Shown one piece after another: positions 7,961-43,823 of a stretch of 64,000 bases of DNA. A program made the translations under genes and the position numbers. Positions within the stretch are counted from its first letter, which is position 1, and each line of letters begins with the position of its first letter. The DNA is from Saccostrea echinata (taxonomy: Eukaryota), in NCBI RefSeq assembly GCF_033153115.1, contig NW_026889765.1, positions 1,054,001-1,118,000 of the forward strand, read 5' to 3'. The notes beneath the pieces were generated by a model. The model did no database searches. It was given only the letters and a program-made list of their open reading frames with translations, and was not told the DNA's origin.

Positions 7961-8887
7961 TCAATTGTGACCAATGACCTACACAGCAAAATTCATACTT
8001 TAGTGTAATCTTAAATAACTTCTTTACACAGTTAATAACAGAGATGAAATTTTAACAACAAACATTCAAAATTAAGATTGTCCTACTCAAAAATCACAGT
8101 AGTTGATATTATGTTTGGCTGTTTTATTTTCTACGATGTGTATAGTTTGAAAAATATGAAATTTTTCGGAAAGTGCGGTAGTGGTCTTCTTTCATTAAAA
8201 AAAAAAAATCCTGTCTGTCTTTCTGTCATCTATAACTAATACCTTTATTAAATTTTAATTAACATTTTCGACTTCTCAGGAACCACTGGATCAACTTCGA
8301 ATTAATTTGGCACAAAGCTTCCTTGGATAATGTAGGTGCATGTGCCTTAATAGCCCGAAAAAGCAGAAAATTTCTGTTAATACAACACTCGACCAAATGG
8401 TCCTGATGTTCAAAAATCTGGTAGAAATATCCTTGCTCATTAAAACTTTTATTCTGCTTGCCTTCGATATGCCAAGGAACAGAGAAGATTTTCAAAGAAA
8501 TAATGCATTTTCACTATAGATTCAGCACAAATCAGACATGTAAAAGTCTTGAAACGCCAAGACTCAACTGTGACATAATAAGTCATTCAAAGGAGATTAT
8601 TTGAAATATCTCATGCTCATTGTAGAACAAATTCTTTTAATTTGTGCACATATATACTTTAATTGTTTGGTGCAAGGCAAAATTTCGAAAATTAGGTCAG
8701 ACAGAGAGAGAGAAAGAGAGAGAGAGAATTCAATACATCTCAACGATTCACAAAAGATAAAATCTTCTATATTATTTTATTTTTGACTAGTTTAAAGATC
8801 TTACAGTTTATTTATTATTGAAAAACATTTCTCACCAAGTGTATCGTAAATCGTATAAAAAAATTATTTTGTTTTCCTTTTCTGACA

Positions 8888-10321
8888 TACGAAAGCCTAT
8901 TAGGATCAAACTACGGTAAAAAAAAAAATTAAAAGGCGTTATAACGCCTTTTCAAAAGGCGTTATAACGCGAAAAAAGGCGTAATAATGCCTTTTGAAAA
9001 GGCGTTATAACGCGGAAAAAGGCGTAATAACGCAAATAAAGGCGTAATTACGCCTTTCCAAAAGGCGTTATTACGCGAAAAAAGGCGTTATTACGCCTTT
9101 CCAAAAGATGTTATTACGCCTTTCCAAAAGGCGTTATAACGCCTATCCAAAAGGCGTTATTACGCCTTTCCAAAAGGCGTTATAACGCCTTTCTAAAAGG
9201 CGTTATAACGCCTTTTTGGAAAGGCGTTATTACGCCTTTGCAAAAGGCGTTATTACGCCTTTCCAAAAGGCGTTATTACGCCTTTTAAAAAGGCGTTATT
9301 ACGCCTTTTAAAAAGGCGTTATTACGCCTTTCCAAAAGGCGTTATTACGCCTTTCCAAAAATTTATAATATAATTTATAATATTAAATCTATAATCTAAA
9401 TATTGCATAAATAAAGATGGCTTTGGTTCAATCTTTCATATATTTACTATTTTAAAATAACGCCTTTCCATTTTTGGATACAACTCCTTTTCAAACAGGC
9501 CGGTAGTACGAATGTGAGTGGGGGGGGGAGGGGGGGTCCCCCACCCCACTTTTTGGTAGAATAGTCTTGCTATAGTTTAAATATAAAAAATCATTAATTG
9601 ATTGCTTGGTCCCTTAACATTTTGTTGCAGTATGGTTAAACTCGGGCAAGTCATTGCATTTAAAAAAAGTTTTACCGAAAAATTAAAAAAAGTTTCCCCT
9701 CAAGTTTAGGCAGTTTATTTTTTTCGGGGGGGGGGGGTTCTTGTTTTTTTGTTTGCTTGTCAATTTTATGGGACCCCCCCCCCCTACTTTAAAAGCACGG
9801 GCCTGTCAAAAACATAATAATGGCCCTTCAAAAGGCATAATGACGCCTTTTTGAAAGGCGTATTAATGCCTTTTAAAAAGGCGTAATGATGCCTTTTGGA
9901 AAGGCGTAATAACGCCTTTTGGAAAGGCGTAATAACGCCTTTTGGAAAGGCGTAATAACGCCTTTTTAAAAGGCGTAATAACGCCTTTTGGAAAGGCGTT
10001 ATAACGCCTTTTAGAAAGGCGTAAACACGCCTTTTGGAAAGGCGTAATAACGCCTTTTAGAAAGGCGTAATAACGCCTTTTGGAAAGGCGTAATAACGCC
10101 TTTTAGAAAGGCGTTATAACGCCTTTTAGAAAGGCGTAATAACGCCTTTTGGAAAGGCGTAATAACGCCTTTTTTCGCGTTATAACGCCTTTTGGAAAGG
10201 CGTAATTACGCCTTTATTTGCGTTATTACGCCTTTTTCCGCATTATAACGCCTTTTCAAAAGGCGTTATTACGCCTTTTAAAATTTTTTTTACCGTATTT
10301 TGATCCTAATAGGCTTTCGTA
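8888..10321. mobile_element. Foldback-type non-autonomous DNA transposon whose arms are ~21-bp palindromic minisatellites
   Basis: TIR TACGAAAGCCTATTAGGATCAAA.TACGGTAAAAAA is mirrored at ~10285-10321. CTGACA lies directly on both sides (candidate 6-bp TSD; a TA TSD is the alternative). Arms of (AAAAGGCGTTATTACGCCTTTCC)n at ~8930-9360 and inverted at ~9830-10280. Confidence 0.8.
9497..9805. mobile_element. Small poly-G/poly-C MITE nested in the centre of the foldback element
   Basis: Ends CAGGCCGGTAG…GCACGGGCCTG with internal G and C runs; TCAAA on both flanks. Confidence 0.45.
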
Positions 10322-13300
10322 CTGACAATATACTATTTGTAAATACTGAAATGCATAAACAGTAAATCTCTGACATAATTGATTAATTTTTTCACGAAAA
10401 AGGTAAAGTACCTTATCTCTTCTGGTTATGAAGGGTTTAATATAAGGTAACTTTTTATAGTCTTTGAACTGCATTTGTTTTGCAAGATGATCTGTCTCCA
10501 TCTCGATCGTCATTGAGCCTTTGTATTAATATTAGCGCCATTCCAATGATCGTTGTACTTACGTCGTTCAAAGGGAGATCATTTGAGTACATCCAGAGTT
10601 ACCTTACGCAAATTTCACAAAAATACAGCTAAGCATTTGAAAGGAAAGTATAAATTCGAGATATCTAGAGGGAGGTGGTGGGATAATACATTTGAAGGCT
10701 ATTAACAGAAATTTTCTTACCCAAACAAAATACATAACATGTCATCATAATTGAAAAATTCAATTTATCATATCAGTATACTGTTGCATGATAAAAGCAA
10801 GGACTATTCATCTTCATCTAATGTACAGCTAAAACAAAGTTTTAAGCTGATCATATCAAAATCCGTCTAATGTCAGATACCCACTGCGACGAAGACAAGA
10901 TATAGCGACACAAATAAAGTTCTTACAATTTCAAAGAGGCATTGATACTGGAAATGGAATAGCATCATCGTAATGTACAAAACTGAATAATATATAAGTT
11001 AAATCATCTATTCTGGCTCCAATCATGATTCTTTCCTACCTATCCTATAATCAAGATGGGAATAAATGAAAAAAATATCCTTGATTTTTGTGCCAGTTAG
11101 TTTCATCGTGTTGTTGAATATTTTCTTCTGTATGCCCTTATCAGACTTCCGTCCAGTGTGTATGTTTCACTAAGAAGAACGAATGACAAGGTCAAACAAG
11201 AATTAATTATATATTTTCAACTACGTATTTGATTTTTCGTAACTCCCAATGAATGTCACTGTGACATATTCATACCTGGAGAGGAAGTAAAATAGTAAGG
11301 TCAACTAACTGAAAAGATTATTAAATGATGTTTATCCTATTTCATAACAATTGCAATAATAAGAGCATGTCACATAATTTAGTTGTTGAATATGACACGT
11401 CTGTAGGACCCTATCAAACTTCCGTCCAGTGCTCCAATATCACTGTGACAAATGGATGACAGGGTCTTACAGTCAGCTTCTTAAATGGTTTACAACCGAA
11501 TAGTTCAAGCTTTTTTGCATCATTATCTAATATACAGCTGAACCTCTGTTGTTGGTCGTTCTAATTTTGAATGGCCCTATCAAACTTCCGTCCAGTGTCA
11601 AATATCCACTGTGACGAAGACAAGATAGATCGACACAAAAAGGTCATGAACTCTGATGCAAAAAAAATACTTGAATATTTGTCTTGCATTCGACAATATG
11701 GCGTTGCTGTTGAATATTTCAACTGTATGCCCTTATCAGACTTCCGTCCAGTGTATCCGTTTCACTGTGACGAACGAATGACAAGGATAAACAATCAATT
11801 TGGTTATACATATATTTTTATTATTATTTTACTGTATTCCTATGTCCCCGTGAATGTCTGAATGTCATTGTTACGTACAAGCGAATAATTGGTGGAGAGG
11901 GGAAATGGTATCTAAGAGTAAACTAACTGAAATTGAACATAAATGCTTTTTTTTTTACCCAAACCGTATAACTTTTATGTCATCATCATTTAGAAGTTGA
12001 CTATTTCATGTCCGTATGATCCTATGAAACTTCCGTCCAGTGCTCCAATATCACTGTGACAAAATGATGACGGAGTTTTTCAGATGCTCATATAGTTTGT
12101 TGTTGTGTGATACAAGTTTTGGGTATTCATTTCATCTAATGCATTGCTAAAACTCGATTTGTTGATCACAATATTTTACATAACCCTATCAAACTTCCGT
12201 CCAGTGTCAGATTCCCACTGTGATGAAGACAAGATAGAGTGACACAAATAAACGTTTGTGAATTTAAAAGGTACAATGTACATTGATGTTGAGATGGGAT
12301 GGCATATTGCAATGTGCATGTGAGAAAAAGAATACTAGTAAATCCATCTATTTTGCTTCCAATCCTAATTGGGATTTTTAATCTATCCTGCAATCAAATC
12401 GAAAATACCCTCATTAAATTTTCATTATACTAGCCAGTATCACCGTTTGTTGAATATTATCTTCTGTATGCCCTTATCAGACTTCCGTCCAGTGTGTCAG
12501 TTTCACTGTGACGAACGAATGACAAGGTCAAACAACTGAAGACTTATTTTATATTTTCAACTATTTGATCACATATGATAAAGATGTTGAATACTAGTTT
12601 TTCATGTCCGTATGACCCTATCAAACTTCCGTCTAAGGCTCCATTATCACTGTGACAAATAATTGACGGGGTCTAACAGTCAGTTGTCATGTGGTTCTCA
12701 GCTGAAATATAAAAACTTTTCGTATTAATCTTCATCAAATACACAAGTAAAACTCTGTAGTTGGTCATTCTCATTTTGCATGGCCCTATCAAGCTTCCGT
12801 CCAGTGTCAAATATCCACTGTGACGAAGTCAAGATATAGAGCTACACAGAATGTTCGTAAACTCTTATGTGAAGAACTATCCTTGAATATTTCTATTGTT
12901 TTCGACGATACTACCGTGCTGTTGATTATTTTCTACTGTATGCCCTTATCAGACTTCCGTCCAGTGTATCAGTTTCACTGTGACGAACGAATGACAAGGA
13001 CAAACAAGAATCAATTTGGTTATATTTTTTATTAATTGCTTACTCAAGTTTCTGTATACCTATGTCCCTATGAATGTCTGAATGTCACTTTAACAAATGA
13101 ATAATTGGTGAAGATGGGAAATGGTAGAGTAAACTAACTGACATTGAACATAAACGATTCCTTAACCAAATGTCATCATCATTTAGAAGTTGAATATTTC
13201 ATGTCCGCATGACCCTATCAAACTTCCGTCCAGTGCTCCAATATCACTGTGACAAATGGATGACAGAGTCATATAGTATGCTGTTGTATGATAAAAGCAA

Positions 13301-15080
13301 TGACTAAAACTCGGTTGTTGATCATAATATTTTGCATGGCCCTATCAAATTTCCGTCCAGTGTCAGATATCCACTGTGACGAAGACAAGATAGAGCGACA
13401 CAAATAAAAGTTCGTGAATTTCAACGATACAATGTTCATTGATGTTGATATGGGATAGTAGTATCGTAATGTAAAAAAAAAAAAAAGATAACTAGTAAGT
13501 CCATTTATTTTGCTTCCAAATTTAGATTGTTTTTACCTGTCCTGCAATTAAAATCGAAAAAAATATCCCCATTATATTTTCATTGTGCTGGCCAGTATCA
13601 CCGTTTGTTGAATAATTTCTTCTGGATGCCCTCACCAAACTTCCGTCCAGTGTGTCAGTTTCACTGTGACGAAGGACTGACAAGGACAAACAAGAATCGG
13701 TTTGGTTATAATTTTTGAATTTTTGCTTACTAATTTCCTACACGTCCCCATGAATATCACTTTGACAAATGCATTCCCAGTAGGAAGGGGAAAGGTAAAA
13801 AAACAACAGCTGAAATGCGTAGTATATAAATTATTTCCTGTCCTTTTTCAGAAGAAAAATTACTTGCATATCATCATCATTCGAAAGTTGAATATTTTAT
13901 GTCCGTATGACCCTATCAAACTTCCGTCCAGTGTTCCAATATCACTGTGACAAATGGATGACAGGGTCTTACAGATGGTTATATACATGTAGTTTGCTGT
14001 TGATAAAACCAAGGAGTATTTATTTTCACCTAATACACAGCTAAAACTCTGTTGTTGATCATAATATTTTGCATGGCCCTATCAAACTTCCGTCCAGTGT
14101 TCCAATATCACTGTGACAAATGGATGACAGGGTCTAAGAGATGATTATATATCATGCTGTTGTATGATACAAGCTTAGGGTATTAATTTTTATCTAATGC
14201 ACGGCTAAACTCGGTTGTTGACCAAAATATTTGCATTGCCCTATTAAACTTCCGTCCAATGTCAAATATCCACTGTGACGAAAACATGGTAGAGCGACAC
14301 AAATAAAAGTTCGTGAATGTCAAAGATGCATTGATGTTGGAAATGAAATGGCAGTTCCTTAATGTACAAAAATACATACTAGTAAGTCAATCAATTTTGG
14401 CTCCAATCTTGATCGTTTTCTACCTATCCTGAAATTAAAATGGAGATTTATGGAAAAAAAAAGCAATAATTAATCAATGATCAATAATTTGATTGTGCTA
14501 GTAGATTTCACCGTATTGTTGAATATTTTTTTTCTGTATGCCCTCATCAGACTTCCGTCCAGTGCGTCAGTTTCACTGTGACGAACGCATGACAAAGACA
14601 AACAAGACTTAAAATTAATTCTATATTTTTAACTATTTGCTCATCTGTATCTTCCCGCGAAGGTCACTGTGACATATGAATATACCTTGGGAGGGGTCTA
14701 AAAGTAAGGTCAACTACCGGTTACCAAAAAGATAATTAATTCATTCATTTCATGTCCATATGACCCTATCAAACTTCCGTCCAGTGTTCCAATATCAATG
14801 TGACAAATGGATGACGGGGTTTTACAGTCACCTTCTCATATGGCTTATAGCTGAATAATTCAGGCATTTTGTATTAATCCTCATCTAATGCACAGAAAAA
14901 ACTCGGTTGGTGGTCATTTTGCATGGCCCTATCAAACTTCTGTCCAGTTTCAAATATCCACTGTGACGAAGACAAGATAGAGAGACACAAAATGTTCATA
15001 AACTCTGATGTGAAGGGCTATCCTTTATATTTGTATTGTTTTCAATGCTACCATGTGTGCTGTTGAATATTTTCTCCTGT

Positions 15081-15342
15081 TTTTTGTTTGTTTATTGTTT
15101 AACGTCTCTCTCGAGAATTTTTCACTCATATGGAGACGCCACCACTTTTTGACCTACACTCGGCACTCAGGGCCATTGAGCAGTAAGGGATCTTTTTCGT
15201 GCAAGCATCTACTGCGACACGGGACCTCGGTTTTTACGGTCTCATCCGGTCTCCACGTCCCACAGTAGGATTCGAATTCGCGACGTAAGGATCAACTCCT
15301 TATTCCGAGACTCTAGAGCGAACGCTCTAACCACTGCGCCAC
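15081..15342 (-). mobile_element. tRNA-derived SINE (Deu/Nin-domain type) inserted in the miRNA array
   Basis: On the minus strand: A-box TGGCGCAGTGG, B-box-like ATTCGAATCC, central GGATGAGACCGTAAAAACCGAGGTCCCG…AAAGATCCC and an A-rich (AAAC)n tail. 13-bp TSD TATTTTCTCCTGT (15068-15080) / TATTTTCTTCTGT (15343-15355). Confidence 0.88.
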
Positions 15343-15960
15343 TATTTTCTTCTGTATGCCCTTATCAGACTTCCGTCCAGTGTGTCAATTTCACTGTGAC
15401 GAACGAATGACAAGGACAAACAAGAATCAACTTGGGCATATTAATTGCTTACTCAAGATTCTGTATTCCTATCTCACCATGAATGTCTGAATGTCACTTT
15501 ACCAAATAAAATTGGTGGAGAGGGGAAATGGTAGAATAATCTAACTGACATTGAACATGAATGATTTCTTACCCAAACAGAATAAATGACATGTCATCAT
15601 CATTAAAAAGTTGAATATTTCATGTCCGTTTGACCCTATCAAACTTCCGTCCAGTGTTCCAATATCACTGTGACAAATGGATGACAGGGTCTAACAGCAT
15701 GCTGTTGTATGATAAAGGCAATAACTAGTCATCTTCATATGACTGAATAATTCACGCATTTTGCATTTATCTTCATCTAATGCACAGAAAAAACTCGGTT
15801 GGTGGTCATTTTGCATGGCCCTATCAAGCTTCCGTCCAATTTCAAATATCCACTGTGACAAAGACTAGAGAGACACAAAATGTTCGTGAACTCTGATGTG
15901 AAGGGGTATCCTTGAAAATTTGTATTGTTTTCAATGATACCTCCTTGCTGTTGATATTTT

Positions 15961-16038
15961 CTTCTGTATGCCCTTATCAGACTTCCGTCCAGTGTGTCAG
16001 TTTCACTGTGACGAACGAATGACAAGGACAAACAAGAA
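15961..16038 (-). ncRNA. mir-184: Representative type A pre-miR-184-like hairpin (mature 3p at 15991-15970, UGGACGGAAGUCUGAUAAGGGC)
   Basis: 5p arm CCUUGUCAUUCGUUCGUCACAGUG, loop AAACUGACA, 3p arm CACUGGACGGAAGUCUGAUAAGG. The G-U wobble pairs form only on the minus strand. Confidence 0.88.
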
Positions 16039-17432
16039 TCAATTTCGTTAAGTACTACTTTTTATTTTATTGTATTCCTTTATCCTCGTGAACGTCTGAA
16101 ATTCACTGTGACAAGTGAATAATTTGTGGTGAAGGGGAATGGTAGAATAAACTAACTGAAATTAAACAAAAATGCTTTTTTATTTACCCAAACAGAATAA
16201 ATTGCATAAATTGCCATTTAGAAGATGAATATTTCCTGTCCGTACGACCCTATCAAACTTCCGTCCAGTGCTCCAGTATCACTGTGACAAATGGATGACA
16301 GGGTCACACAGCATGCTGTTGTATGATAAAGGCAATGACTAGTCATTTTTCATATACTGCATTGCTACATGTAAAACTCGGTTGTTGATGGTAATATTTT
16401 GCCTGGCCATATCAAACATCCGTCCAGTGTCAGAAAGGCAAGACAGAGCGACAAAAATAAAAGTTCGTGAGTTTCAAAGTTACATTGATATTGAGTTAGA
16501 AGTACCCTAATGTAACAAAAAAATGAATACTAGTAAATCCATCTATTTTGTTTCCATTGTAAATTGTTTTTACCTATTATGCAATAATCGAAAGAAAAAA
16601 TACCCGTATTTTTTCACCGTGCTGTTTTCTGTATGCCCTCATCAGACTTCCGTCCAGTGTGTCAGTTTCACTGTGACGAATGACAAGGTCAAACAAGACT
16701 TAATTTTATATTTATAACTACAAGTATTTGCACATCTGAATCTCCCCGTGAAGGTCACTGTGACATATAAATATTGGGAGGGGTCCATAAGTAAGGTTAA
16801 CTTACTAAAAAGATAATTAAATTAATTTCTCGTCCGTATAAGCCTATCAAACTTCCGTCCAGTGTTCCAACATCACTGTGACAGATGGATGAGGTTCTTA
16901 CAGTCACCTTCTCATATCTTTTATAGCTGAAGAATTCAAGCATTTTGCATTTATTTTCATCTAATGCACAGAAAAAACTCGGTTGGTGGTCATTCTGCAT
17001 TGCCCTATCAAACTTCGGACCAGTTTCAAATATCCACTGTGACGAAGACAAGAAAGATCGACACAAAATGTTTATGAACTCTGATATGAATGGCTATCCT
17101 TGAATATTTCTATTGTTTTCAATGATACCTCCTTGCTGTTGAAATTTTCTTCTGTTTGTCCTTATCAGACTTCCGTCCAGTGTGTCAGTTTCACTGTGAC
17201 GAACGAATGACAAGGTCAAACAAGAAATTAATTTGGTTATCTTTTTATAAATTGCATACTGTATTCCTATATCCTCATGAATGTCTGAATTTCACTGTGA
17301 CAAGTGAATAATTGGCGGTGAAGGGAAATGGTAGAGTAATCTAACTGAAAATTCAAATTGAACTAAAATGATTCTTTATCCAAACAGAATAAATGACATG
17401 TCATCATCATTTACATGTTGAATATTTCATGT

Positions 17433-17504
17433 CCGTATGACCCTATCAAACTTCCGTCCAGTGTTCCAATATCACTGTGACAAATGGATGACAGGGTCTT
17501 ACAG
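17433..17504 (-). ncRNA. mir-184: Representative type B pre-miR-184-like hairpin (mature 3p at 17460-17439, UGGACGGAAGUUUGAUAGGGUC)
   Basis: CUGUAAGACCCUGUCAUCCAUUUGUCACAGUG-AUAUUGGAA-CACUGGACGGAAGUUUGAUAGGGUCAUACGG folds into a long stem-loop. Confidence 0.85.
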
Positions 17505-17591
17505 ATGATTATATAGTATTGTGTTGTTAAAACCAGTGAGTATTTATTTTCATCTAATATACAGCTAAAACTCGGTTGTTGATCATAATAT

Positions 17592-17665
17592 TTTGCATGG
17601 CCCTATCAAACTTCCGTCCAGTGTCAAATATCCACTGTGACGAAGACAAGATAGAGCGACACAAA
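17592..17665 (-). ncRNA. mir-184: Representative type C pre-miR-184-like hairpin (mature 3p at 17620-17599, UGGACGGAAGUUUGAUAGGGCC)
   Basis: UUUGUGUCGCUCUAUCUUGUCUUCGUCACAGUG-GAUAUUUGA-CACUGGACGGAAGUUUGAUAGGGCCAUGCAAA folds into a long stem-loop. Confidence 0.85.
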
Positions 17666-19949
17666 TGAAAGTTCGTGAATTTCAAAGATACGCGTACAAT
17701 GTACATTGATGTTGAGATGGGATAGCAGTAAAAAAAAAAAGATTACTAGTAAATTCCAATCTATATTGTTTTTCACCTATCTTGCAATCAAAATCGAAAA
17801 AATATCACCATATTAATATTTTCACTGTGCTATCCAGTATCACCGTATTGTCGAATATCATCTTCCGTATGCCCTTATCAGACTTCCGTCCAGTGTGTCA
17901 GTTTCACTGTGACGAACGAATGACAAGGGCAAACAAGAATTAATTTGGTTATCTAACCTAACTGAAATTAAATATGAATTATATGCTTTTTCTTACCCAA
18001 ACAGAATAAATGACATGTCATCATCATTTAGACGTTGAATATTTCATGTCGGTATGACCCTATCAAACTTCCGTCCAGTGTTCCAATATCACTGTGACAA
18101 ATGTATGACAGGGTCTTACAGATGATTGCTGTTGATAAAACCAACGAGTATTTATTTTCACCTAATACACGGCTAAAACTCGGTTGTTGATCTTAATATT
18201 TTGCATGGCCCTATCAAACTTCCGTCCAGTGTCAAATATCCAATGTGACGAAGACAAGATAGAGCGACACAAATAAAAGTTCATGAATTTCAAAGATACA
18301 ATGTACATTTCATGTTGAGATGGGCGCAGTACCGTAATGAGAAATAAAATGAACACTAGTCTAGTAAACCATCTATTTTGCTTCTAGTGTAGAACCCTGC
18401 AAATCAATATCGGAATAAAGGAAAAAAATACCTTTGTTTTTTCATTGTGCTGGCCAGTATAACCGTTTGTTGAATATTTTCTTCTGTTTGCCCTCACCAA
18501 ACTTCCGTCCAGTGTGTCAGTTTCACTGTGACGAAAAAATGACAAGGTCAAACAAGAATGTTTATATTTGCCCATTTGATCAGATTTCTAGAGTTTTTAT
18601 GTAACTGTGTCGTATAAATGACAGAAAGTTAAAAAGCTGTGCAAAGGATAATTTTCATTTTTAACAAAAGAATGATTTGTAGTAAATACATCAAGATAAA
18701 AATGATTTATGGTTTTGATAACCTCTTCTTCCAGTATTTGAAATACCGATATATCTTCCCATAATATTAAATCGAAGACATTCCGAAAAAAGCTGCGAGC
18801 TTTTTTAATTAGCCAGATAAAATATTTTATTGAATTTTTTATGCCCCCACCCTTGTTTTAATGTTAAAAACCTCATTCTTCATAACATTTTAAAATATTT
18901 ATAAGACGGTTGTGGAAGGTATTATTTTGAAATTAAATATGCAGAGTTTGTTATAATCAAAGACCCCGCCCTTTCAAAATTTTCCAACGATGAAAAAAAA
19001 ATGAAATGTAGTTCAAATCTCTGAGTACTCATTAAGTCATGTCATACTTATTTTCTTTTAGCTTTGGGTTTTGATTTATCCATGTTAAAATTTATTCGCG
19101 TTCAGATTTTCGAAATAATAAATTTCAAACGTTTGGATTGAAATCTATCCGACAAAATAAATCGAACGTTGTTAGGACTTCATTATATGAATGAAGTAAG
19201 AAGCAGGCGATACATGTGTTTACAACAAAAGCCGCTAAAGAGCCATAACTAAATCTTAAAAAAAAAGAAGTTATTTGCGATATATTCACGCTGCGTTATG
19301 TGGATTTTCAAACTTGTTTCTAATTTAACACAAAACTACAGGACTTGTATAATCCTCGTTTTTCGCATTCATCACGGAAAAAACTAGATAAAAAAAGGTC
19401 ATGTACTTACTATTTTGTGTGAATTTCTATTGATTATGATAAATAAGTATACATGTATTCTTCAAGGATGGAATGAAAAACAAATTCACTCAAGAGATTA
19501 TATAGTTCTTTGATGAGTAAGAAATTAAACTACTCAAGCTCTAATTAGCTGCTTGTAATTAAATGAAAGAGGTAATAGGTACCTGGACACAACAACGAGT
19601 ACTCCAAAGGAAAGAAGATAATTGCTATGAAAACATCATGATTGCTTAATTAAGGGGATTTCATTTTCACACAATTTTGATAAAATTATCAATTATCGTT
19701 ATTAATAAAATAAAAAATTGTTAAAGAGGTAAATGGGATTTTGATTTCTATAAGTGGAGGTGATATTTGACAATTAATAAAATTTTGAAAGAAAAGATTG
19801 AAAAATAATATTCTACATTAAAGGTATAACAGAATATTAAGTTTATACTATAGTAAAGAAATTATAATGAACAATGAAAATGCCGATAATTCAATTTTAC
19901 CGTTCTCTTTATTTGAAATAAAGATGAATCGAGACAAAGTATAATTAAG

Positions 19950-20249
19950 CAGGCGCGGATCCAGGAATTTTTTTCCATGGGGGGGGGGGGGGTCCATACC
20001 AATCAAAAAAAATTCTGACCCAAAAATTTCTTGACAAGCCAAAAAAAAAAAAAGAAAAAAAAGAAAATGTAAAATCCATTTTCAAAACGTGAAAAACACC
20101 TATTTCGTGATGGTGATGGTGGGGTTCACGTTTTCTGGGGGGGGGGGGGGTCCAAAGTCATTTTTTTATTTGCTTCAGTATATACCTTAAATAACTCTGC
20201 AAATTCCAGGGGGGTCCGGACCCCCGACCCCCCTCTAGATCCACGCATG
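19950..20249. mobile_element. Poly-G MITE with a 6-bp TSD
   Basis: TIRs CAGGCGCGGATCCAG…CTAGATCCACGCATG, flanked by a direct ATTAAG duplication. Confidence 0.7.
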
Positions 20250-22050
20250 ATTAAGTTACATGTACCTCTGCTATTATGACATTTCGTATAATAATTGGGA
20301 CATCTAGCTTCATTTTTATTTTAGCCTCAATTGAATTAATTCAAAAGTGTACGCCTATGGAGCAGCTTATAAAATAGTTGATTTAGTGCCCTTTGATAAA
20401 CTTCGATTATATAACAGAGATGTATTCATTCATAATTGGTAAATTAGTTTTGGATATTCTGGCCGTTTTCTTCTCTAAGTGCCAATATATATTTTTTTTC
20501 TGCTGAATAATGGGTTACTGATGTAAATAAAACACATAGGGGGAGTCTGTTGATTATTATATGTACATCTCTTGGGCAATATATAATTCTGTATTTTCAA
20601 GAATTCCGTACATTGACGATCAATGATTGGGGTGTTTTGTAAATTGAATTTTACCAAATTTGGTAATGACCTGATGAATACCAGACCTAGGTGCTTCCTT
20701 CACATAGGAACTCGGGAACAGCGGTGGAAGTTTACTCGGGCCGCACTTCTCACTCGCGGGACACCGTGCTTAACCCTGGCACGTATAAAACTTGGGTCAG
20801 TCATATAATCCATGATTGTTTGGATTTTGAGGGATACGAAAAAAGGAAATTTACTAATACAGGACTCGATTGGAAGGGATTTGTGTGATACTCTGTGTAT
20901 AAGTTAAGGAGAAAAAAATGAAAAGGACTAGTACCTTCACAGGAGGTAAAGAATCAGAATGCAGATCTCAGATTTTCAAATCGACTCAAGAGAGCAAATT
21001 TATAAATAGCAATGAAGATCATCTTCGCAAGAATTTATCACTTGGGTGTGTATAACAACAAATGATCTTCTGTAAGTGGCACTTTTAAGTTTGTTCGATT
21101 TCAACGATCGACAATGATTCTACATGGAGTGGGTTGTCGAACCTTTCGTCCCAATCCTCGAGTCCAAGATTTGGGGGATGTCATTCAAATGAACAGGATC
21201 ACGAGACAAAAGCTAAAGATAAGTAAATACCACGTCAGCCACAAGTCTGTTAATGATGAGGGCGAAGAAATGTTGGTCCCAGATGCTGGGTACCTAAAGG
21301 TAAATGTGTTCGAATGGCTGCCTGTTTTACGTATTTTTGTGGCGGACCCTGGGGGGTATATTGCTTCATAAGAGTAATTTACTCCAAAAGCACATTATAA
21401 CTCCTTTATGTAGAAATGATAAATATTTTAGTCCAGAAAAGAGGCAGGGGGGATTTCTTGGATCATACACAGTTACCCTATACTCTTTCATTAAAATCCA
21501 GCATTGCCTAGAAACTTATGAGGAAGGATGTACGCATATTGATGCTTTATACACTGTACATCCAAAGCACCGATTGCATGTACAATTTTTTTCCTCTCAA
21601 TTTTTGTTCTATTAAAAATTCATTGCAAAAAATATCTTTCAAAATTCTTGTATAAAAGATTAAAACAATTTCAAATTATAGTTTGAAATTGTAGTAAAGA
21701 AGAAAACTATTCCAAAAATTATATTTTGGTCTTAGTCGTAAGTTTTTGCGTTAGACAGGGCCCAACATTGCAAACTACATGTAAGTGGTTACATTTGAAG
21801 ACTTGAATGGAATCATCTGTGATCGGTCGCAGTCCATAGGCATATGAAGGGGACCTAGACTCTCCCTTTTTAAAGATTTCAAATTGATGCCTGATCTTAC
21901 TTGTTGAATATTAAGATAAGGTTCACTTTTTAAAAGTTACAACCTGTACAGAAATTGAAGATATAATTGTCCGTCGACCCTGTCCTTTCAGCTAAGTGCC
22001 TAGAGAAAAATCAAAGTACTGTGAGTACTGATAGACGGTGGCATGAATGA

Positions 22051-24212: not shown

Positions 24213-25819
24213 ACTTTTCACATTTGTGTCATGTTCATAAAAACGAAAAAAAATGTGTACGAATTGACTTTTGTAGTTTGCATACGAATATACGAGTCGG
24301 TTTGTGTACAAATTAGTATTAGCTGTAGGACGGCGTAATTTAATGAATATTCATGAAGCGAGAAATATTGATAACGACAAATATCAGGAATTAAGCTTTG
24401 TACCCATCAACAAAATGTCTTTGAAATAACTTGAGAGTATTTGTTAACCATATGCATTTTATTTTCAAACATCGAATCAACCCTATTTTCATTATTTTGA
24501 CTCTGCAAAAATCGCCGCTAGGGTCCCCGTGATTTTACACTGTTGTTATTTATAGCCCAAAAGCAGCAGCAATAGACTGTGGCTATAAATAGCCACCGTC
24601 TAATGATGACTACGTTTTGGTTATGGACAATATAAATATACCAAATTTTGAATCATTCCGGTTTGTAAAAATACAGTTAGGATCAATATTGTGTATCATA
24701 TATTGTCATGTAAATTTTGAGTTTACCGAGTGGCAGTAAGTTGTCATGTTGTAAATTTCATATTTACTGCCACCCGGAAAAATTCAAATTATAAGGTACA
24801 TGTCGCGTTGAAGTAAACGTAGAGCGTATGACACATTGCAAGCACTTAAGTCGGATACATCTAACGTAGATTAGGACAGGCTAGCTTGCGTGTTTCCAAA
24901 GCCAAAAAGTAAAAAAAAAATGGTAAAAATTCAACAAAACTAAGAAAGTTGTTTCAATTTATCGCCTGCTTGTGTGAATTGTCAATTTAATCAAAACCAG
25001 TTCTGTTTGCGAACATGGTATCAGTTCAAGTCTTTGATTATAAACTATCGCTAGTATTGGAACTCAAACCTTAAACTGTCTTTCTTTAAGAGGAAGCATT
25101 CGCTTGAGAATTAGAACTGTTAATTATCCATGGCTCTCACTTCTCTTAAAAGAAAGGAGAAGGGTGGGGTGGGGTAGGGGGTTAAGGAGGTACTCCTCAT
25201 GTAGAAGGGGATGGAAGTAGTACAAAGTATATACACTTCTGGTTTATAGACATTGTAAAACTCATTAAATGTCAGAATGTAACGATCATCTATCGGGTCA
25301 ATATTGCAACATTTGCAATATTGTCTGTATGCGTGTCTGGAGACGATATGATCAGCAAAGCGTTCTGGAATATATCTGACTGTAAAGGCGAAGAACTCTT
25401 AAATCTGACAGCTCTTATAGCCTGTATTGTCAGAGTGGGCAGGTTATACTTACCAAATACTTATATAGGTCCTGACTAGAGCCACTCATAGACCATGAAG
25501 ACTCATCTTTATTGATTGTTTGATCTTTCCTGCAGATATTGTATCCATAATGAGTAGATACTTTGGCATGCTTGAAAAATAAATTGAGACTGGAAGTCGG
25601 CCGAATAGAAAGAAAAGTGACTTTTTGTAAAGATTCGGAAAGTAAATCGAGAATTTTGAATACCCAAAATTACAAAAAAATTTGCAGAGACATAACACAG
25701 ACTAATGCTAATATTCTTCCTCTGTCTGGCCTCCTTCATCAAGTTGAAGATTTGGCCAGTTGCGTGTGTGCATGTTTAAAAGAAAGTTTTGTTTTTTGTT
25801 TTTGTTTTTGTTTTTTTTT

Positions 25820-25862
<43 letters not shown>

Positions 25863-26171
25863 TTTTTTTTCGGGGGGGGGGGGGTGTTTTTAAATAATAT
25901 TGTCGTTTATCAATTTTCAATCTGGAGTTGAGTATGACCATAAAAGAGAACTAAGGCTAATATTGTCGTTTATTAATTTTTCAATCTGGATGACCACTTC
26001 AGATTGAAAATCAATAGACAATATTTCATTAGCAAAAAATAAATAAATAAATAAATAAATAAATAAAAATTAAAGATTCAACAGATGCACATACAATCTT
26101 ATTTGACACAGCAAAACAATCTGCACATATACGTATGTAATGCCTACTTTGGTATCTGATTTGCTTATTAC

Positions 26172-29100
26172 TAGCCATTCTCTGTAACCACTTAAACTTT
26201 TGTGGCACGCATAGTCACAGATTTTTTTCAAATTTGGCTAGAATTTACCACCTCATAAACTACTCCAAAAAATATTGTTAGATCAAATGAATGTTGAGTA
26301 GTTACCATGGAAACGGTGTCTAAAGTTGATTTTTTCTGAAAAATGCAATTTTTGGGAATGTTATTCAATGAAATGCGGCTAATTCAATTCACGTTACTCA
26401 CAGAAATAAAAAGTATGACATCTGATTTTAAAAGTCATTTAAAAACATTGTTGGTATTCAGTCTATAAATATGAGAAATCTATGATTAAAATAGCAGACA
26501 TTCATTTAAAAATTGAATTATCTCCCTTTGATAATTGTGAGCTCTTTAATGTGAGAGATAAAAAAATCATTGGACAAAACTGACTGAAAGTTGTTTACAT
26601 TGTCAACATATATCCTGGATTTCAAGTAAAATCAAGTGTTTTTTTTTCTGTTTATTTAATGTGCATACAAATTTTAACCTCTTTGTTTATTTCCTGGATG
26701 CAAAAGAGTAATTTTTATGTGTGAACAATGGGGAAATGTACAAGACCACATGGTACAAGAAATCAGCTCTATCTTAAGTTTATCTTTTTATCCTCATTTT
26801 GGAACTCCTAAGACCTTGAGGCTCAGGCTTCAATATCATGAATGTGCACAGACTCTGATATCAGAATTATATTGAATTGGTTGTAAGAATAGGTACAGTG
26901 TCTCAATCAGAGTACGTGATATATTACAATGAATAACAGCCAGGAAAGCCAGTGTTTCCTTTTAAAAACGAATGTGGAAAAAAAACTGAATTATAATGTT
27001 AGAAAAGTAGGCTTTTGATTTTACCTAAATAATTAAAGTCTAGCTACATTTACATGATCGTACAAAACTGGAAGTTGAAAGTCAGATAAAAAATAGGCTT
27101 GGCAACAACAAAGTACAGGTGTATCAAGTTTATATTGAATGATGTGATGTAAGTTGATAATGTTGCTGAAGCAAGAATTTTCTTTAAAGGAAAGGTCTTT
27201 ACCCAATAAAAAACAAAAAAATTGTTAAGGCCAATAATAAAAATGTTTTGTTTGATTCCTATCGACCAGTCAAAATTATACTTTTGGGGGGGGGGGGGTG
27301 CATAGAAATACAAATTGTCTGAATCATATTTAAAGTTAACAGTTTATCATATCTCTAGACTAAGATACATTTAGATTGAACCTTGTAGCAGTAAAATTAA
27401 TATTAAATCAGTCTAGCTGTATTTTATTTACAACGAAAACATAAATAAATTTCTGACACCCCCCCCCCTCTCCCAAAAGTAAAAATCTAAAATTAAGCAA
27501 AAAATAAATCTATACCTCGGAATGGGGGCGGGAAGGGGTTAATCACTTATGAAAGAAATACTTCCTTTAATATTTATAAATAACGCTTCTTAACGTTTTA
27601 CAAGGTATCCATGTTTTTTGTTTCGTTTGTTTGTTGTTGTTTTTTAACAAATGCCTCTTACCAATTGATGTGGGTAAGTGCTTTTACATGGTTCCTGGAA
27701 GGGGTGGAATAAGTCCTGGTCATTGGTTACTTTACTATATTCATTTTTTTAAAAAAAAAATGAAAACCGTAGGAAGAAGGCAACAACAGATTATTCATTT
27801 TCAACAATTTCAAGGACTAAACTTTAGAAATTATGTTTACATTACACCCCATAAGGTGTACGATTCCATCAAGCTTACCAACCAACTCAAATTTAGCAAC
27901 CGACATAAATTCAAGAAAGCACAAAAACAGATTATCTGAACAGGTCCAGCAGATTTTTACAACAGATAATTATTGATTAAATTTTGGGAAATAGCAGATC
28001 TATTATGTGTAAACCCATGCATATTTGGGTTGAAATATTTATCATCAATGTCTCTAAATTTTCAAGTTTTTGAGAATAATATTGCAAAGTAAAATGGACT
28101 TAGGCTTTTTCTGTCAACTTCTCTGAAAAAAGTCACAGGAAAACATAATTTGACTCTCACTGGAAAAGTGCGGGCTATTGAATAGAGTCAAAAATGTACA
28201 TTTTAGAACAGGGACTTAGTCTACAAAAACAACGAAAGACTGTTTTTACATGCATGTAGCACAATTCTCTACATACAAGTCACTCAATATGGTAAGTGTA
28301 TAGGCTTTCAATATTTTGACTTGGCTACATTTTTATCAATAAATGACCTTTAAAAAACATTATCATAGCATTTTCACATTATGCATCAAGCTAAAGATAA
28401 GAATGTAATTTATTTACCATGCAGTTTCAGTAAAATAAATTGTGTATAAAACAGGATACGCTTTCACAATATCCAAGTATAAATGCTATACTAACAAGCT
28501 AATTCAGGGAATCTGTGTCCCCTGCTTAAGGAAAAAAGAAGAGCATGTACGGATCTAGAGGGGTGGTGGGGGTGAGGGGACGGGACACTTTAAGAGGAGC
28601 GGGCTGGGCCATAGGGAGTTATGATATAAAATTTCATTGCAAAAGCTTAAAATCTTTTTGAGATATCACTCGGAAATGGACGTTTTACACACAAACAGAA
28701 TGTATAAATTTTTGACATTGACCTTTGACCTCTGGACCTCGAAATCAATAGGGTCTTTTTTTTTAGTTCATAGGAAGTTGTGCTTTAAAATATCGATGCA
28801 AAAGCTTGAAGGCTTCTCGAGATATCGCACAGAAATAAAGTGTTTAAACAGAATTTATGTATTCATGACCTTGACCTTTGACCTTAAAATCAATGGGAGT
28901 CTTCCCAAGGCCACAGGGATTTTTTATGCAAAATTTCATTGCAAAGGCTCAAAGGCTTCTCGAGACATCGGGCCGAAACAAAAGTGTTACAGAAAGACAG
29001 ACTGATGGACGGTCAAACAGACCCAAATCAATATCCCCCATTTTCAGTGAAAGCGGGGGACAAAAAGGCAATTTTTATATACCATTGTGACCTTGAACTT

Positions 29101-40310: not shown

Positions 40311-41991
40311 AGGCAAATGATAAAGATACTATATTTTGGAAACATATAAGATTTTAAGAAATTCGTGACCGAATAAAATTGAAATTAAATAACCAAAAAT
40401 GAGACATCATTAATGGCATTTAACAAATTAGTGTTTCTCTTTGTTTAGTACCTTTCAATATACATGTATATTGATAAAGCTTCTTATTTTTTTGGGAGGG
40501 GGGGGGGTTGGTTCAGGTTGATTTTCTTAGATTCAAAATTCAGTTGTTGATATATACTACGAAGCTTTGTCTCGTTGTCAACATCAGTATTTTTTCTGGT
40601 CAGTATAAAATCATATTGCCCTCAAAAGTCCATAATGTAAAAGTACATATTGACTTAAATGTTCGCTATTTTTTTTTCTGAAAGATATGCCTGGGTAATA
40701 ATTATGAAAGAAACAACAAAGAAACGAACATCAGCATTTTGCGACAATTGGTCATCATCTATCAATTAGGAACAATAAAATATATCGCCCGGTAATTATT
40801 TATCTTCCCACGAACCTATATACCTGTCTTCAGCCATTAACTTCAGTTTCTGTTTACTGTTGTGGTGCTTTACCAACATACATGCATGTTCCTTCACCTG
40901 TAACATGCCAGGCGAATTTTTTGTTTTATCCACCTTCTCTAGATCCCCGCCCTATACTTTTGAACAAATGCTATATATTTACCCCCAAAAGATAGTAAGT
41001 TTAAATACATTTTTTTGAGTTCCCCCACTTTTAATTATCATTTATCATACAAATATGTTTAAATGCATAAAGAAAATGTACTTTAAAAAAATATTTTATT
41101 GGGTTTATAATGTATAGTATATATTAACTCCAAATGATCTAATTTGAGTGCTCCTTCATTAATCATTTATTCTTTTGCAAAATTGCCCGATCTCCCATAT
41201 TGAAACTTCTGTTACCTTCTGGGACTTTAAACAACCGATAGCAATGATTACAACACGAAAGTGTAAAATTAAATTAGCGGTGATAATAAAAGTCAGTAAT
41301 ATATATTATCAGGAGGAAAACAGGTATAACAATGAGGACTTATTGGGCCAAGAAAGTCGAAGCAAACATATTTCAGGCTATTGTGGGTAGAGGGGTCAGC
41401 ATTCGCGTTCAACACTGGCCAGAGAAACCAAAACACTAATTTTCTTGGCCTGATGTTTTCCCTCGCGTCAATACCGTACAACTTGGAGGTTGTAGAAACA
41501 ATGTAGACACCCATCGACCAGTTAGATGGTTTAAGTCATTATACACCTGAAAACGTTGATTTTCGTCTACCTATAACGAAGAAGTTCTTTAAAGATTGAC
41601 AGTTTTAATTATGTGCTAATTTAAATCCAATCTGCATTGCTTAAGACATTGGATTTTCATAATTTGCTTAAAATAATATACATGTGTCTTGGACGAACGT
41701 TCTTCAGCAATGAAATGGAAGTGAAAGCGCGCAACAGTTTCTTTTTCTTCACGTCGCTTCTTCTGTTGAAATAAGGATTTCTAATACTTATCATTCCTAA
41801 GCTTGCATTGATATTCAAAATGTGAACATATATTGGTAGATTTAGTGTACAGTAAAAAGTTCTAGATCATGAATTACTGTATTTCTGCCTTTCCTACTCA
41901 GACTCGGCGAACGTCCATACCACTCTCCAGGGATTCGACGAAACGGAGAAAGCAATGTGTCAACCATGGACGGTATAAATCTACCCGGCTC

Positions 41992-42717
41992 ATGACACCG
42001 CACTCAGATGAAAGTGAAGAAGAAACCAATAATTGCGTCAACTGTGATGCGCAAAGGTCTACAAATAACAAACACAGCCGTCAGGTAGAAAACACAAACA
42101 GAAAGAGTTCAGATGGCAATATGGCGTTCCCTGCCCTCTCTGTGATGGGTGGCGGGGGACAGGTTGTCAGATCCCGAAGTAAAGTCAGCATCAATGAACC
42201 CGATGACGAACAACGAAGCCCGTACCGAAACAGCATCAACTTAAAAAACAAGGAAACGGTCATTCTCAATGTTGGTGGACAAATTTTCGAAACATATAAA
42301 CAAACACTTAGCAGATTAAAATCATGTAAGCTGGCCAGTGAATCAGAACTTCGAAGATATTATCGTGAAAGCAAGGACGACTACTTTTTCGACAGGGATC
42401 CGCAGTTATTCAGTGTTGTGTTGAATTATTTACGGACAAATGAACTTCATCTGCCAACGTATCTTTGTGGCCCAGCAGTCCAGAGGGAATTTGACTACTG
42501 GGGGATCGAGGAAGAGGACATAGAACGATGCTGTTGGCAGCCCTACAACACGTGGAAAACTCAAAACAAGTCTTTGGAGAAGTTGGAGTACGATCGAAAA
42601 AGATCCATGACTCAGCAGCATTTAGAGAAAGACAGGAACAGCCCACATTTCTGGACCCGATGTAAAGCTGTAGTGTGGAACTTCCTTCAAAACCCAAATA
42701 CCTCACTAGGTGCTAAG
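41992..42717 (+). CDS. Kv3/Shaw-like voltage-gated K+ channel, coding exon 1 (T1/BTB tetramerisation domain)
   Basis: VILNVGGQIFETY…YFFDRDPQLFSVVLNYLRTNELHLPTYLCGP…YWGIEEEDIERCCW. Acceptor at 41901, donor AAG|GTAAGT at 42717/42718 (phase 0). Start codon is uncertain (41992 or 42121). Confidence 0.92.
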
Positions 42718-43823
42718 GTAAGTCACTTGGTTAATTTCTTTCATTTGTACATTAAGGCAATATACAGGGTGTTTTTGCATAACTGTTGTACTGGAGAAAC
42801 GCATGAAAAACTACCCCAGTCCCCCACGCTTTCCAACCTATACTATCTTCTGTTAGTGTAGCAGCGCTGGTAATTATGGTACTTTAGAACTACTCTATAT
42901 GTGGTTGGGAGAGTAGAAGCAAAGAAGCTTAATTTACTGTTCTATAGAAGAGTCAGTCCCTTTTCAATTTTTTTGGCTGCTTTTTTTGTGGCAAAATATT
43001 TGATTATTGCGTCCTTGATATAAGTAATGAAGAGTATTTTGGATTAAACAATATATTTGCCTTGTGTTGTCAAATGATATACTCTAGTCTAATAGTCAGT
43101 AAACATTGATTAAGTATCTAATAGTGTATACATCTAGTAATTTAGTGCATTTAAGTCAGCTACACTCTGTGAAATCGTTAACATTCTTCACTAAAATTCT
43201 GTTGATTTTCAAGCGATTGATTGCTTGACCAGTTATTATTTGTATGCATTTACATACAACTCAATGGAAAAACAAAAGCAAACAAAAAGAAAACAAAAAT
43301 AACTAGCAGCTATAGGTGTCATTCCAATTACTTCATTGGTCAATATGCAGAGAATATTGTCACTTTTTTTTCCGTTCATAGTAACATCTTCGCAAGTGAT
43401 GGTCCTAATCTGCGTTGCATCATCAAATAACTAGACCTCTAGAAAATAACGATACTATGGTGTGTGGTCCATTGTTATATTTTTATACAGTTTTGACATT
43501 AAAAGCAGATGGCTTTCTTTGATTAATCCACCCTTTGTTTCCAGACTCGAAAAAACAAAAGAAAATTAAGAAAAACAAAAACAAAAACCGTAAATGGCAA
43601 TATATATGGAGTGAAAAAATCTTATTTAATGTTTTAAAAATCATTTTAAATTTTAAAATCATTGTAACAAGTGTAAAAATTGCTTCAAATTCAATATCTT
43701 TTTGAAAATGCTGTTACTTTTGTAGATACAATGTAAATTTAGAGTACAGTGTACATGCATTGAATTTATTGGTTGATGTGACTGTACTGTATACTTTTAG
43801 GGATATAGTATTCTGCTCACTGC

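What the first reader, a model, noticed from the sequence alone, without database searches (positions are those of the whole stretch)
10851..18556. A 36-hairpin miR-184-family supercluster hidden in what looks like a degenerate satellite
Seen: a ~70-nt conserved core recurs 36 times, separated by much more divergent AT-rich spacers of roughly 55-240 bp (one is longer because of a SINE). On the minus strand each core folds into a pre-miRNA-like stem-loop, and its 3p arm begins UGGACGGAAG in most copies. Known: miR-184 (UGGACGGAGAACUGAUAAGGGC) is a bilaterian miRNA processed from the 3p arm and usually present at low copy number. Inference: this is a lineage-specific, dosage-amplified miRNA polycistron, structurally analogous to mammalian C19MC or fish miR-430 arrays, and possibly acting in germline or early embryo. 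I recall that miR-184 paralogue expansion has been noted in Pacific oyster, so the family expansion may be known even if this locus and its architecture are not.
Basis: partly seen in the sequence, partly recalled or inferred. Interest (0 to 1): 0.92.

Follow-up and report, generated by a model that had tools for sequence, protein, structure and literature searches.

The report
Tandem miR-184-family microRNA hairpin array
An 8-kb stretch of this mollusc genome holds 36 tandem minus-strand copies of a microRNA-184-like hairpin, kept far better than the DNA between them; it is real, but a matching array is already catalogued in the Pacific oyster.

Summary
There are 35 cores with CTTCCGTCCA (two mismatches or fewer) at 11124-18559, plus one decayed copy at 10851-10930. 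All lie on the minus strand, and 32 keep the miR-184 seed GGACGGA.

They form about 11 higher-order repeats of roughly 600 bp. Read on the RNA strand, each repeat is A, C, B, then a decayed fourth hairpin D. Among these repeats the hairpin columns are 92% identical, the spacers 67% and relic D 62%. Representative A/B/C copies fold at -29 to -38 kcal/mol (z -4.9 to -6.6). The plus strand folds 8-9 kcal/mol worse. A CAAC (CNNC) motif lies 16-19 nt past the 3p end in 30 of 35 copies.

Type A shares sequence blocks in both arms with the canonical mir-184 of the same genome, which lies on another contig. The array type occurs at one locus only. That locus is assembled twice, with 36 copies on C16 and 44 cores on C54.

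The hairpin type (UGGACGGAAGUCUGAUAAGGG.) matches the Crassostrea gigas mir-184 array of Xu 2014; MirGeneDB names about 42 Cgi-Mir-184 genes. So this is a new member of a known kind. Processing and expression could not be tested because no sequencing run was listed. Earlier notes of this scan on the same stretch (subtypes, CNNC) agree.

The parts
10851..18559 (-). Whole array: 36 miR-184-like hairpins in about 11 higher-order repeats (order A, C, B, relic D on the RNA strand)
10851..10930 (-). Copy 36: decayed C-type hairpin (3p reads UUAGACGGAUUUUGAUAUGA), no longer folds (z +0.65)
11124..11203 (-). Hairpin 1, type A, weak fold (-21.9)
11397..11476 (-). Hairpin 2, type B, -36.5
11563..11642 (-). 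Hairpin 3, type C, weak fold (-23.1)
11719..11798 (-). Hairpin 4, type A, -30.4; Rfam mir-184 32.7 bits
12008..12087 (-). Hairpin 5, type B, degraded 3p and stem (-17.2)
12172..12251 (-). Hairpin 6, type C, -22.2
12460..12539 (-). Hairpin 7, type A, -28.9
12604..12683 (-). Hairpin 8, type B, seed mutated (UAGACGG)
12772..12851 (-). Hairpin 9, type C, -27.7
12932..13011 (-). Hairpin 10, type A, -33.4 (z -5.8)
13201..13280 (-). Hairpin 11, type B, -31.4
13328..13407 (-). Hairpin 12, type C, -32.7 (z -6.4)
13618..13697 (-). Hairpin 13, type A variant (3p ..UUUGGUGAGGGC; changes are wobble-compatible), -28.4
13899..13978 (-). Hairpin 14, type B, -37.0 (z -5.7)
14065..14144 (-). Hairpin 15, B/C hybrid (B loop and 5p arm, C 3p end and flank), -25.2
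14227..14306 (-). Hairpin 16, type C, -28.6
14530..14609 (-). Hairpin 17, type A, -31.7
14752..14831 (-). Hairpin 18, type B, apical stem broken (-20.6), no CNNC
14915..14994 (-). Hairpin 19, type C, seed mutated (UGGACAGA)
15090..15343 (-). tRNA-headed SINE inserted 15 nt after hairpin 20; it explains the one long spacer
   Evidence: the 433-bp spacing is also present in C54
15348..15427 (-). Hairpin 20, type A, -34.4; its CNNC was displaced by the SINE
15622..15701 (-). Hairpin 21, type B, -36.7
15807..15886 (-). Hairpin 22, type C, 4-nt deletion in the 5p arm (-20.3)
15960..16039 (-). Hairpin 23, type A, -34.4 (z -6.1)
16080..16159 (-). Example of relic D (fourth hairpin of the unit; 3p seed lost; z -0.25)
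16236..16315 (-). Hairpin 24, type B, -37.7
16395..16474 (-). Hairpin 25, type C remnant, 5p arm lost (-14.5)
16625..16704 (-). Hairpin 26, type A, 4-nt deletion in the 5p arm (-25.7)
16830..16909 (-). Hairpin 27, type B, degraded (-22.0)
16991..17070 (-). Hairpin 28, type C, seed mutated (UGGUCCGA)
17148..17227 (-). Hairpin 29, type A, -33.5
17270..17349 (-). Example of relic D (z +0.26)
17429..17508 (-). Hairpin 30, type B, -37.0 (z -6.5)
17589..17668 (-). Hairpin 31, type C, -31.8 (z -5.0)
17861..17940 (-). Hairpin 32, type A, -36.4 (z -6.6); best Rfam mir-184 score, 33.4 bits
18046..18125 (-). Hairpin 33, type B, -34.5
18197..18276 (-). Hairpin 34, type C, -25.6
18480..18559 (-). Hairpin 35, type A variant; first hairpin in the presumed direction of transcription, -30.3

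Best explanation
This is a tandem array of miR-184-family microRNA genes on the minus strand. It is a paralogue of the single canonical mir-184 that sits on another contig. Shown: about 24 of the 35 non-decayed copies are intact by strict criteria and 32 keep the seed. The hairpins are held under constraint while the spacers, and a fourth hairpin that lost its seed, decay. The array is homologous to the mir-184 array of Crassostrea gigas. Inferred: the array is transcribed from a start beyond 18559 towards 10851 as one or a few long primary transcripts. Microprocessor cuts each hairpin, using a lower stem of about 10-11 bp and the CAAC (CNNC) motif 16-19 nt downstream. Dicer removes the apical part. 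The 3p strand is loaded into Argonaute. The three main 3p forms are UGGACGGAAGUCUGAUAAGGGC, UGGACGGAAGUUUGAUAGGGUC and UGGACGGAAGUUUGAUAGGGCC. Because the seed GGACGGA is that of miR-184, these RNAs would read the same seed sites as miR-184. They differ from it at positions 9-12 and at the 3' end. The array grows and shrinks by unequal crossing-over: the two assembled versions of the locus hold 36 copies and 44 cores.
For: Copy number far exceeds chance. Representative A/B/C hairpins fold with z -4.9 to -6.6, while relic D and copy 36 give z near 0. The minus strand is 8-9 kcal/mol more stable than the plus strand. 96% of pair cells are kept. 12 of 20 pairs vary only by G-U-compatible changes, which would be A-C mismatches on the plus strand. 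One pair switches C-G to U-A, 21 against 12 copies. Hairpin identity is 0.92, spacer 0.67 and relic D 0.62 among higher-order units, p = 5e-31. Indel columns between the two locus versions number 2 in cores and 105 in spacers. CNNC lies at +16..+19 in 30/35 copies here and 36/44 on C54. The canonical mir-184 of the same genome scores 61 bits against a gathering score of 54.1, and shares GUUCGUCACAGU, ACACUGGACGGA and CUGAUAAGGGCAU with type A. The C. gigas array has the same derived 3p, UGGACGGAAGUCUGAUAAGGG.. 42 MirGeneDB-named Cgi-Mir-184 genes appear in the C. gigas expression table.
Against: There is no expression or processing evidence for this genome, because no sequencing run was listed. 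No copy reaches Rfam's mir-184 gathering score; the best is 33.4 bits against 54.1. In adult C. gigas the array-type paralogues each take about 0.0003-0.002% of miRNA reads, against 10.9% for the canonical gene, and several lack star reads. Eleven of 35 copies fail strict intactness. Substitution divergence between the two locus versions is not significantly lower in cores: 2.0% against 2.6%, p = 0.17. The loop is as conserved as the arms, which is unusual for miRNA genes.
Confidence: 0.78

Rival explanations
1. The array is a largely silent, slowly decaying tandem repeat that descends from a mir-184 duplicate. The hairpins still look like pre-miRNAs, but their output is negligible and has no regulatory effect. 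Their apparent conservation would come from repeat homogenisation rather than selection.
For: Array-type paralogues are very rare in adult C. gigas small-RNA data and some lack star reads. Eleven of 35 copies are damaged and a whole subtype (D) has already decayed. The test between the two locus versions shows no significant deficit of substitutions in cores.
Against: Homogenisation acts on whole repeat units and cannot explain 0.92 against 0.67 identity within the same units, nor why relic D decays at the spacer rate. Variation is biased towards changes that keep pairing. Indels are excluded from cores. A conserved CNNC lies outside the hairpin. The same derived 3p sequence is kept in C. gigas despite spacers that look diverged by eye.
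Confidence: 0.14
2. The locus makes another class of small RNA (piRNA or endo-siRNA from a long hairpin-rich transcript), or it acts as structural or satellite DNA. In either case it would not be a set of Drosha/Dicer substrates.
For: The architecture is repetitive. The plus strand also folds, with z about -4. No reads are available to exclude this.
Against: There is a single 8-10-kb locus, not a dispersed or megabase satellite. Constraint is confined to units of about 70 nt with pre-miRNA geometry, a strand-specific wobble pattern and a CNNC at Microprocessor distance. The units are homologous to a bona fide miRNA gene.
Confidence: 0.05
3. The array is an assembly artefact, that is, a collapsed or inflated repeat.
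For: The locus is present twice in the assembly, and the two versions differ in copy number.
Against: The two separately assembled versions agree in order, subtypes, the SINE insertion and the flanks. They are 99.35% identical over the first 5.4 kb of the aligned block. The copies are diverged enough (68-88% between units) to be assembled unambiguously.
Confidence: 0.02

Closest known systems
Crassostrea gigas mir-184 array (Xu et al. 2014, PMC4138081, Table S8; MirGeneDB Cgi-Mir-184-P8 to P15 as used in PMC7488030)
   Same: Both have tens of tandem minus-strand hairpins whose 3p arm reads UGGACGGAAGUCUGAUAAGGG., with a 5p arm ..CCUUGUCA....UUCGUCACAGUG. In C. gigas the hairpins lie in two stretches of about 4.5 kb. 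By eye, relic D here matches the C. gigas scaffold43150 hairpin type (CCCCUCUC...GUCACAGUGACAUUCA). Both have a separate, highly expressed canonical gene (P7 in C. gigas) elsewhere in the genome.
   Different: In C. gigas the listed units are mostly one type, about 125-130 bp apart, ending ..GGGA. Here three maintained subtypes (ends GGGC, GGUC, GGCC) and one decayed subtype form a higher-order unit of about 600 bp. The array is 7.7 kb here and about 9.6-10.4 kb in the second version.
Canonical bilaterian miR-184 (Rfam RF00657; UGGACGGAGAACUGAUAAGGGC)
   Same: Positions 1-8 and 13-22 are identical in type A. The mature strand comes from the 3p arm. There is a homologous 5p arm and apical stem. 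A CNNC lies near +16.
   Different: Positions 9-12 read AGUC or AGUU instead of GAAC. Types B and C also differ at the 3' end. The copy number is 36-44 instead of 1. All copies score below Rfam's gathering threshold (33 bits or less, against 54.1).
Large same-seed miRNA arrays: zebrafish miR-430 cluster, primate C19MC
   Same: Many tandem hairpins share one seed, within a repeat-unit architecture that includes subtypes. They are presumed to be polycistronic and to change copy number by unequal crossing-over.
   Different: The families are unrelated. Those arrays have documented massive stage-specific expression (recalled from general knowledge, not tested here). No such expression is shown here, and adult C. 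gigas data show very low levels.

Membership tests
MIR-184 family | Seed nucleotides 2-8 = GGACGGA | tested here: met
   32 of 35 copies; 30 carry the exact UGGACGGAAG
MIR-184 family | The mature sequence lies in the 3p arm of a stable hairpin of about 60-70 nt | tested here: met
   Folds. 24 of 35 copies have MFE of -25 or lower, at least 16 paired 3p bases and an intact seed
MIR-184 family | Precursor homology beyond the seed to a bona fide mir-184 | tested here: met
   Type A shares 5p, apical and 3p blocks with the genome's own canonical mir-184 (L018), which scores 61 bits against a gathering score of 54.1
MIR-184 family | Rfam RF00657 gathering score (54.1 bits) | tested here: not met
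   Best score 33.4 bits, E = 3e-4; 20 copies are detected at E below 10 and none at gathering. The shortfall comes from the changed central positions and a 4-nt shorter 5p segment. Rfam's threshold is not the family definition used by MirGeneDB
Bona fide miRNA gene (MirGeneDB-type criteria) | Reads from both arms, uniform 5' ends, 2-nt 3' overhangs | not testable with these tools
   No sequencing run was listed, so read laying could not be used
Bona fide miRNA gene (MirGeneDB-type criteria) | Microprocessor context: lower stem of about 11 bp and a downstream CNNC | tested here: met
   The lower stem is kept across subtypes (helix 1, 94% paired). CNNC lies at +16..+19 in 30/35 copies
Oyster Mir-184 tandem array (C. 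gigas type) | Derived 3p UGGACGGAAGUCUGAUAAGGG. in tandem hairpins at a single locus separate from the canonical gene | tested here: met
   compared by eye with Table S8 of PMC4138081. Synteny with C. gigas was not tested

The most novel reading that the evidence does not exclude
The array is an ancient, selectively maintained, stage- or tissue-restricted miRNA battery, for example maternal, early embryonic or gonadal. Its three surviving subtypes have diverged in their 3' halves while sharing the miR-184 seed. Its copy number is polymorphic (36 copies against 44 cores). It would be a molluscan counterpart of miR-430 or C19MC, and would explain why adult C. gigas libraries barely detect these paralogues.
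Probability: 0.25. Interest if true: 0.6.

Novelty: new member of a known kind. Interest (0 to 1): 0.4.

Why it matters
miR-184 is one of the most conserved animal microRNAs and is normally a single-copy gene. An array of dozens of seed-identical paralogues, maintained by selection, raises a clear question about dosage or stage-specific use. This locus adds details that I did not find in the papers I could read for the Pacific oyster:

- a higher-order unit with three maintained subtypes;
- a decayed fourth subtype that serves as an internal neutral control;
- a conserved CNNC;
- a copy-number difference between two versions of the locus.

The phenomenon itself is already on record, so the gain is incremental unless expression data reveal a special role.

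Tried and rejected
- **Rfam at gathering threshold:** no mir-184 hit in the window. Only sub-threshold hits appear with the E-value setting.
- **TRF:** did not detect the array.
- **The look-up of sequencing runs (kind rna, whole array):** none was listed, so read laying and any expression test were impossible.
- **Metagenome scan with a 23-nt array-specific pattern:** no match. Cross-species conservation therefore rests only on the published C. gigas table.
- **Rosani 2021 and Huang 2021** (the 44 and 8 C. gigas copies): not held.
- **Literature searches for the exact mature sequences and for the P8/P13/P15 names:** nothing relevant.
- **Core versus spacer substitutions between the C16 and C54 versions:** not significant. 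The distal third of the arrays is not in one-to-one register, which weakens this test.
- **Bacterial-type promoter scan of the upstream flank:** uninformative. TATA-like and GC-box-like strings about 300-400 nt upstream of hairpin 35 were seen by eye, but the flank is AT-rich and this was not tested.
- **L019** (a 2-mismatch match to miR-184, 3.4 kb from the canonical gene): does not fold (-13.5) and was rejected as a gene.
- **Species identity:** not established. The sequences differ from the C. gigas table, and the assembly is 923 Mb.
- **K_chan_RES hit:** considered and set aside as unrelated to the finding.
Full report
**Observation.** The motif CTTCCGTCCA is the reverse complement of UGGACGGAAG. 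With up to one mismatch it occurs 34 times between 11146 and 18502, always on the + strand. Shuffles of the whole window give 1.67 matches. With two mismatches allowed there are 35. A further decayed copy lies at 10851-10930. Spacing between copies is 127-303 bp, with one gap of 433 bp. That gap holds a tRNA-headed SINE inserted 15 nt after hairpin 20. Tandem Repeats Finder did not report the array, so 'looks like a degenerate satellite' is fair.

**Anatomy.**
- On the minus strand every 80-nt segment around a core folds into a single stem-loop with the conserved 22-mer in the 3p arm.
- There are three subtypes:
  - A has 3p UGGACGGAAGUCUGAUAAGGGC.
  - B has UGGACGGAAGUUUGAUAGGGUC.
  - C has UGGACGGAAGUUUGAUAGGGCC.
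- They recur in strict register.
- Cutting the array at the A copies gives 11 higher-order units of 472-912 bp.
- Aligning these units shows a fourth, decayed hairpin (D) between B and the next A. D keeps GUCACAGUGACAUUCAGAC but has lost the UGGACGGA arm.
- The units fall into two variant classes that partly alternate, and are 68-88% identical to one another.

**Evidence that the hairpins are the functional unit.**
- Among higher-order units, mean pairwise identity is 0.92 in hairpin columns (5p 0.89-0.95, loop 0.90-0.94, 3p 0.91-0.96). It is 0.67 in spacers and 0.62 in relic D (Mann-Whitney p = 5e-31). All parts of a unit share one duplication history, so this contrast is best read as purifying selection. 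Relic D serves as an internal control.
- Nine representative A/B/C copies fold at -28.6 to -37.7 kcal/mol, with z -4.9 to -6.6 against dinucleotide shuffles. Relic D and copy 36 give z near 0.
- The plus strand of the same segments is 8-9 kcal/mol weaker.
- In the alignment of 34 copies, 96% of pair cells are standard pairs. Twelve of 20 pairs vary only through G-U-compatible changes. One pair switches C-G to U-A between subtypes, 21 against 12 copies. The wobble pattern points to the minus strand as the RNA strand.
- A CAAC (CNNC) motif starts 16-19 nt after the 3p end in 30 of 35 copies here and 36 of 44 in the second version of the locus. It sits within spacers that otherwise diverge. From established knowledge of Microprocessor substrates, this is the distance expected for the CNNC motif.
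- From the fold of hairpin 32, a 5p strand of about 22-23 nt would begin at CCUUGUCA. That leaves 2-nt overhangs and a lower stem of about 10 bp. This is an inference.
- By strict criteria (seed intact, MFE of -25 or lower, at least 16 paired 3p bases), 24 of 35 copies are intact. 32 of 35 keep the seed.

**Relation to miR-184.**
- An exact UGGACGGAGAACUGAUAAGGGC occurs once in the genome, on another contig (C33).
- That hairpin folds at -35.7 kcal/mol and scores 61 bits on Rfam mir-184, against a gathering score of 54.1.
- Type A shares with it the blocks GUUCGUCACAGU (5p and apical stem), ACACUGGACGGA and CUGAUAAGGGCAU. Homology therefore extends well beyond the seed.
- The array copies score only up to 33.4 bits. 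The family's Rfam threshold is not met, mainly because positions 9-12 changed (GAAC to AGUC or AGUU) and the 5p arm changed with them.

**Genome-wide picture.**
- Array-type hairpins occur at only two places: this one (C16) and C54:32.774-32.784 Mb.
- The window aligns colinearly with C54 at 95-99% over at least 39 kb. A gene at 55.7-56.8 kb is also matched there, reported at 100%.
- C16 is at least 28 Mb long. The second copy is therefore either a retained haplotype scaffolded into a large sequence or a very recent duplication of at least 64 kb.
- The C54 version has 44 cores against 35 here, which indicates unequal crossing-over.
- Substitutions between the two versions are not significantly rarer in cores (2.0% against 2.6%, p = 0.17). 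Indel columns are 2 in cores against 105 in spacers.

**What is known.**
- Xu et al. 2014 (PMC4138081) reported that mir-184 had 67 BLAST hits in the C. gigas genome, confined to two stretches of about 4.5 kb. They also predicted 14 mature types, and set the locus aside.
- Their Table S8 lists hairpins about 125-130 bp apart with 3p UGGACGGAAGUCUGAUAAGGGA and 5p ..CCUUGUCACACAUUCGUCACAGUG. This is the same derived type as type A here.
- By eye, relic D matches their scaffold43150 type.
- The expression table of PMC7488030 uses MirGeneDB names. It lists canonical Cgi-Mir-184-P7 at 10.9% of adult miRNA reads. It also lists 41 further paralogues (P8a-d, P10, P11, P13a-b, P14, P15a1 to u), each at about 0.00002-0.002%. 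Several of them lack star reads.
- PMC9679248 notes 8 against 44 annotated copies in two other studies.
- The expansion is therefore already on record for the Pacific oyster. This genome is a different one: the assembly is 923 Mb, the 3p ends differ, and the unit has three subtypes.

**Mechanism proposed.**
- A minus-strand primary transcript starting beyond 18559 is cut hairpin by hairpin by Microprocessor and Dicer.
- The 3p strands enter Argonaute and read miR-184 seed sites.
- The three subtypes differ in their 3' halves.

Shown: structure, strand, constraint, motif placement and homology. Inferred: transcription, processing, loading and any dosage or stage-specific role.

**Limits.** No sequencing run was listed for the array, so nothing could be laid on it. 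A metagenome scan for the array-specific 23-mer found nothing. Two key papers were not held. The species was not identified.

**Verdict.** The feature is real and well supported. It belongs to the miR-184 family by homology and has clear signs of selection on the hairpins. The kind is already known, so it counts as a new member with a somewhat different architecture. Earlier notes of this scan on the same stretch (three subtypes in register; CNNC at a fixed distance) were checked here and agree.

Noticed in passing
window 8887-10322: A 1.4-kb insertion built of two inverted arrays of a 23-bp palindromic unit (AAAGGCGTTATTACGCCTTTCCA and its inverse). It is absent from the C54 version of the locus, so it is a polymorphic foldback or MITE-like element just downstream of the array.
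   Followed up: partly
window 15090-15343 (-): A tRNA-headed SINE inserted 15 nt after hairpin 20. It displaces that hairpin's CNNC. The same 433-bp spacing is present in the C54 version.
   Followed up: partly
window 41869-42861 and 48852-49682 (+): A Shaker-type voltage-gated K+ channel gene, with a BTB_2/T1 exon and an Ion_trans exon. Rfam K_chan_RES scores 56.4 bits (gathering 51) at 49323-49436, but many pairs are non-canonical. The hit probably reflects coding conservation of the pore-S6 region rather than a proven editing hairpin.
   Followed up: partly
window 55668-56849 (-): A second K+ channel open reading frame (Ion_trans, 393 aa) on the opposite strand, so there is a small Kv gene pair next to the miRNA array.
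   Followed up: no
G000:C33:5388849-5388870 (L018:1452-1532): The canonical mir-184 gene of this genome (exact mature sequence, Rfam 61 bits). A 2-mismatch match 3.4 kb away (L019) does not fold and is probably chance or a dead copy.
   Followed up: yes
window 1-64000 versus G000:C54:32764254-32829500: The whole window is present twice in the assembly at 95-100% identity, although C16 is at least 28 Mb long. This is either a retained haplotype inside a large scaffold or a recent segmental duplication.
   Followed up: partly
window 20000-20250: An interspersed repeat of about 250 bp with more than 2800 first-look candidates genome-wide, at 80-90% identity.
   Followed up: no
window 25563-25931 and 28637-29005 (+): Two open reading frames of the same length (122 aa), about 3 kb apart, with no Pfam match. 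This may be a local duplication or a repeat element.
   Followed up: no
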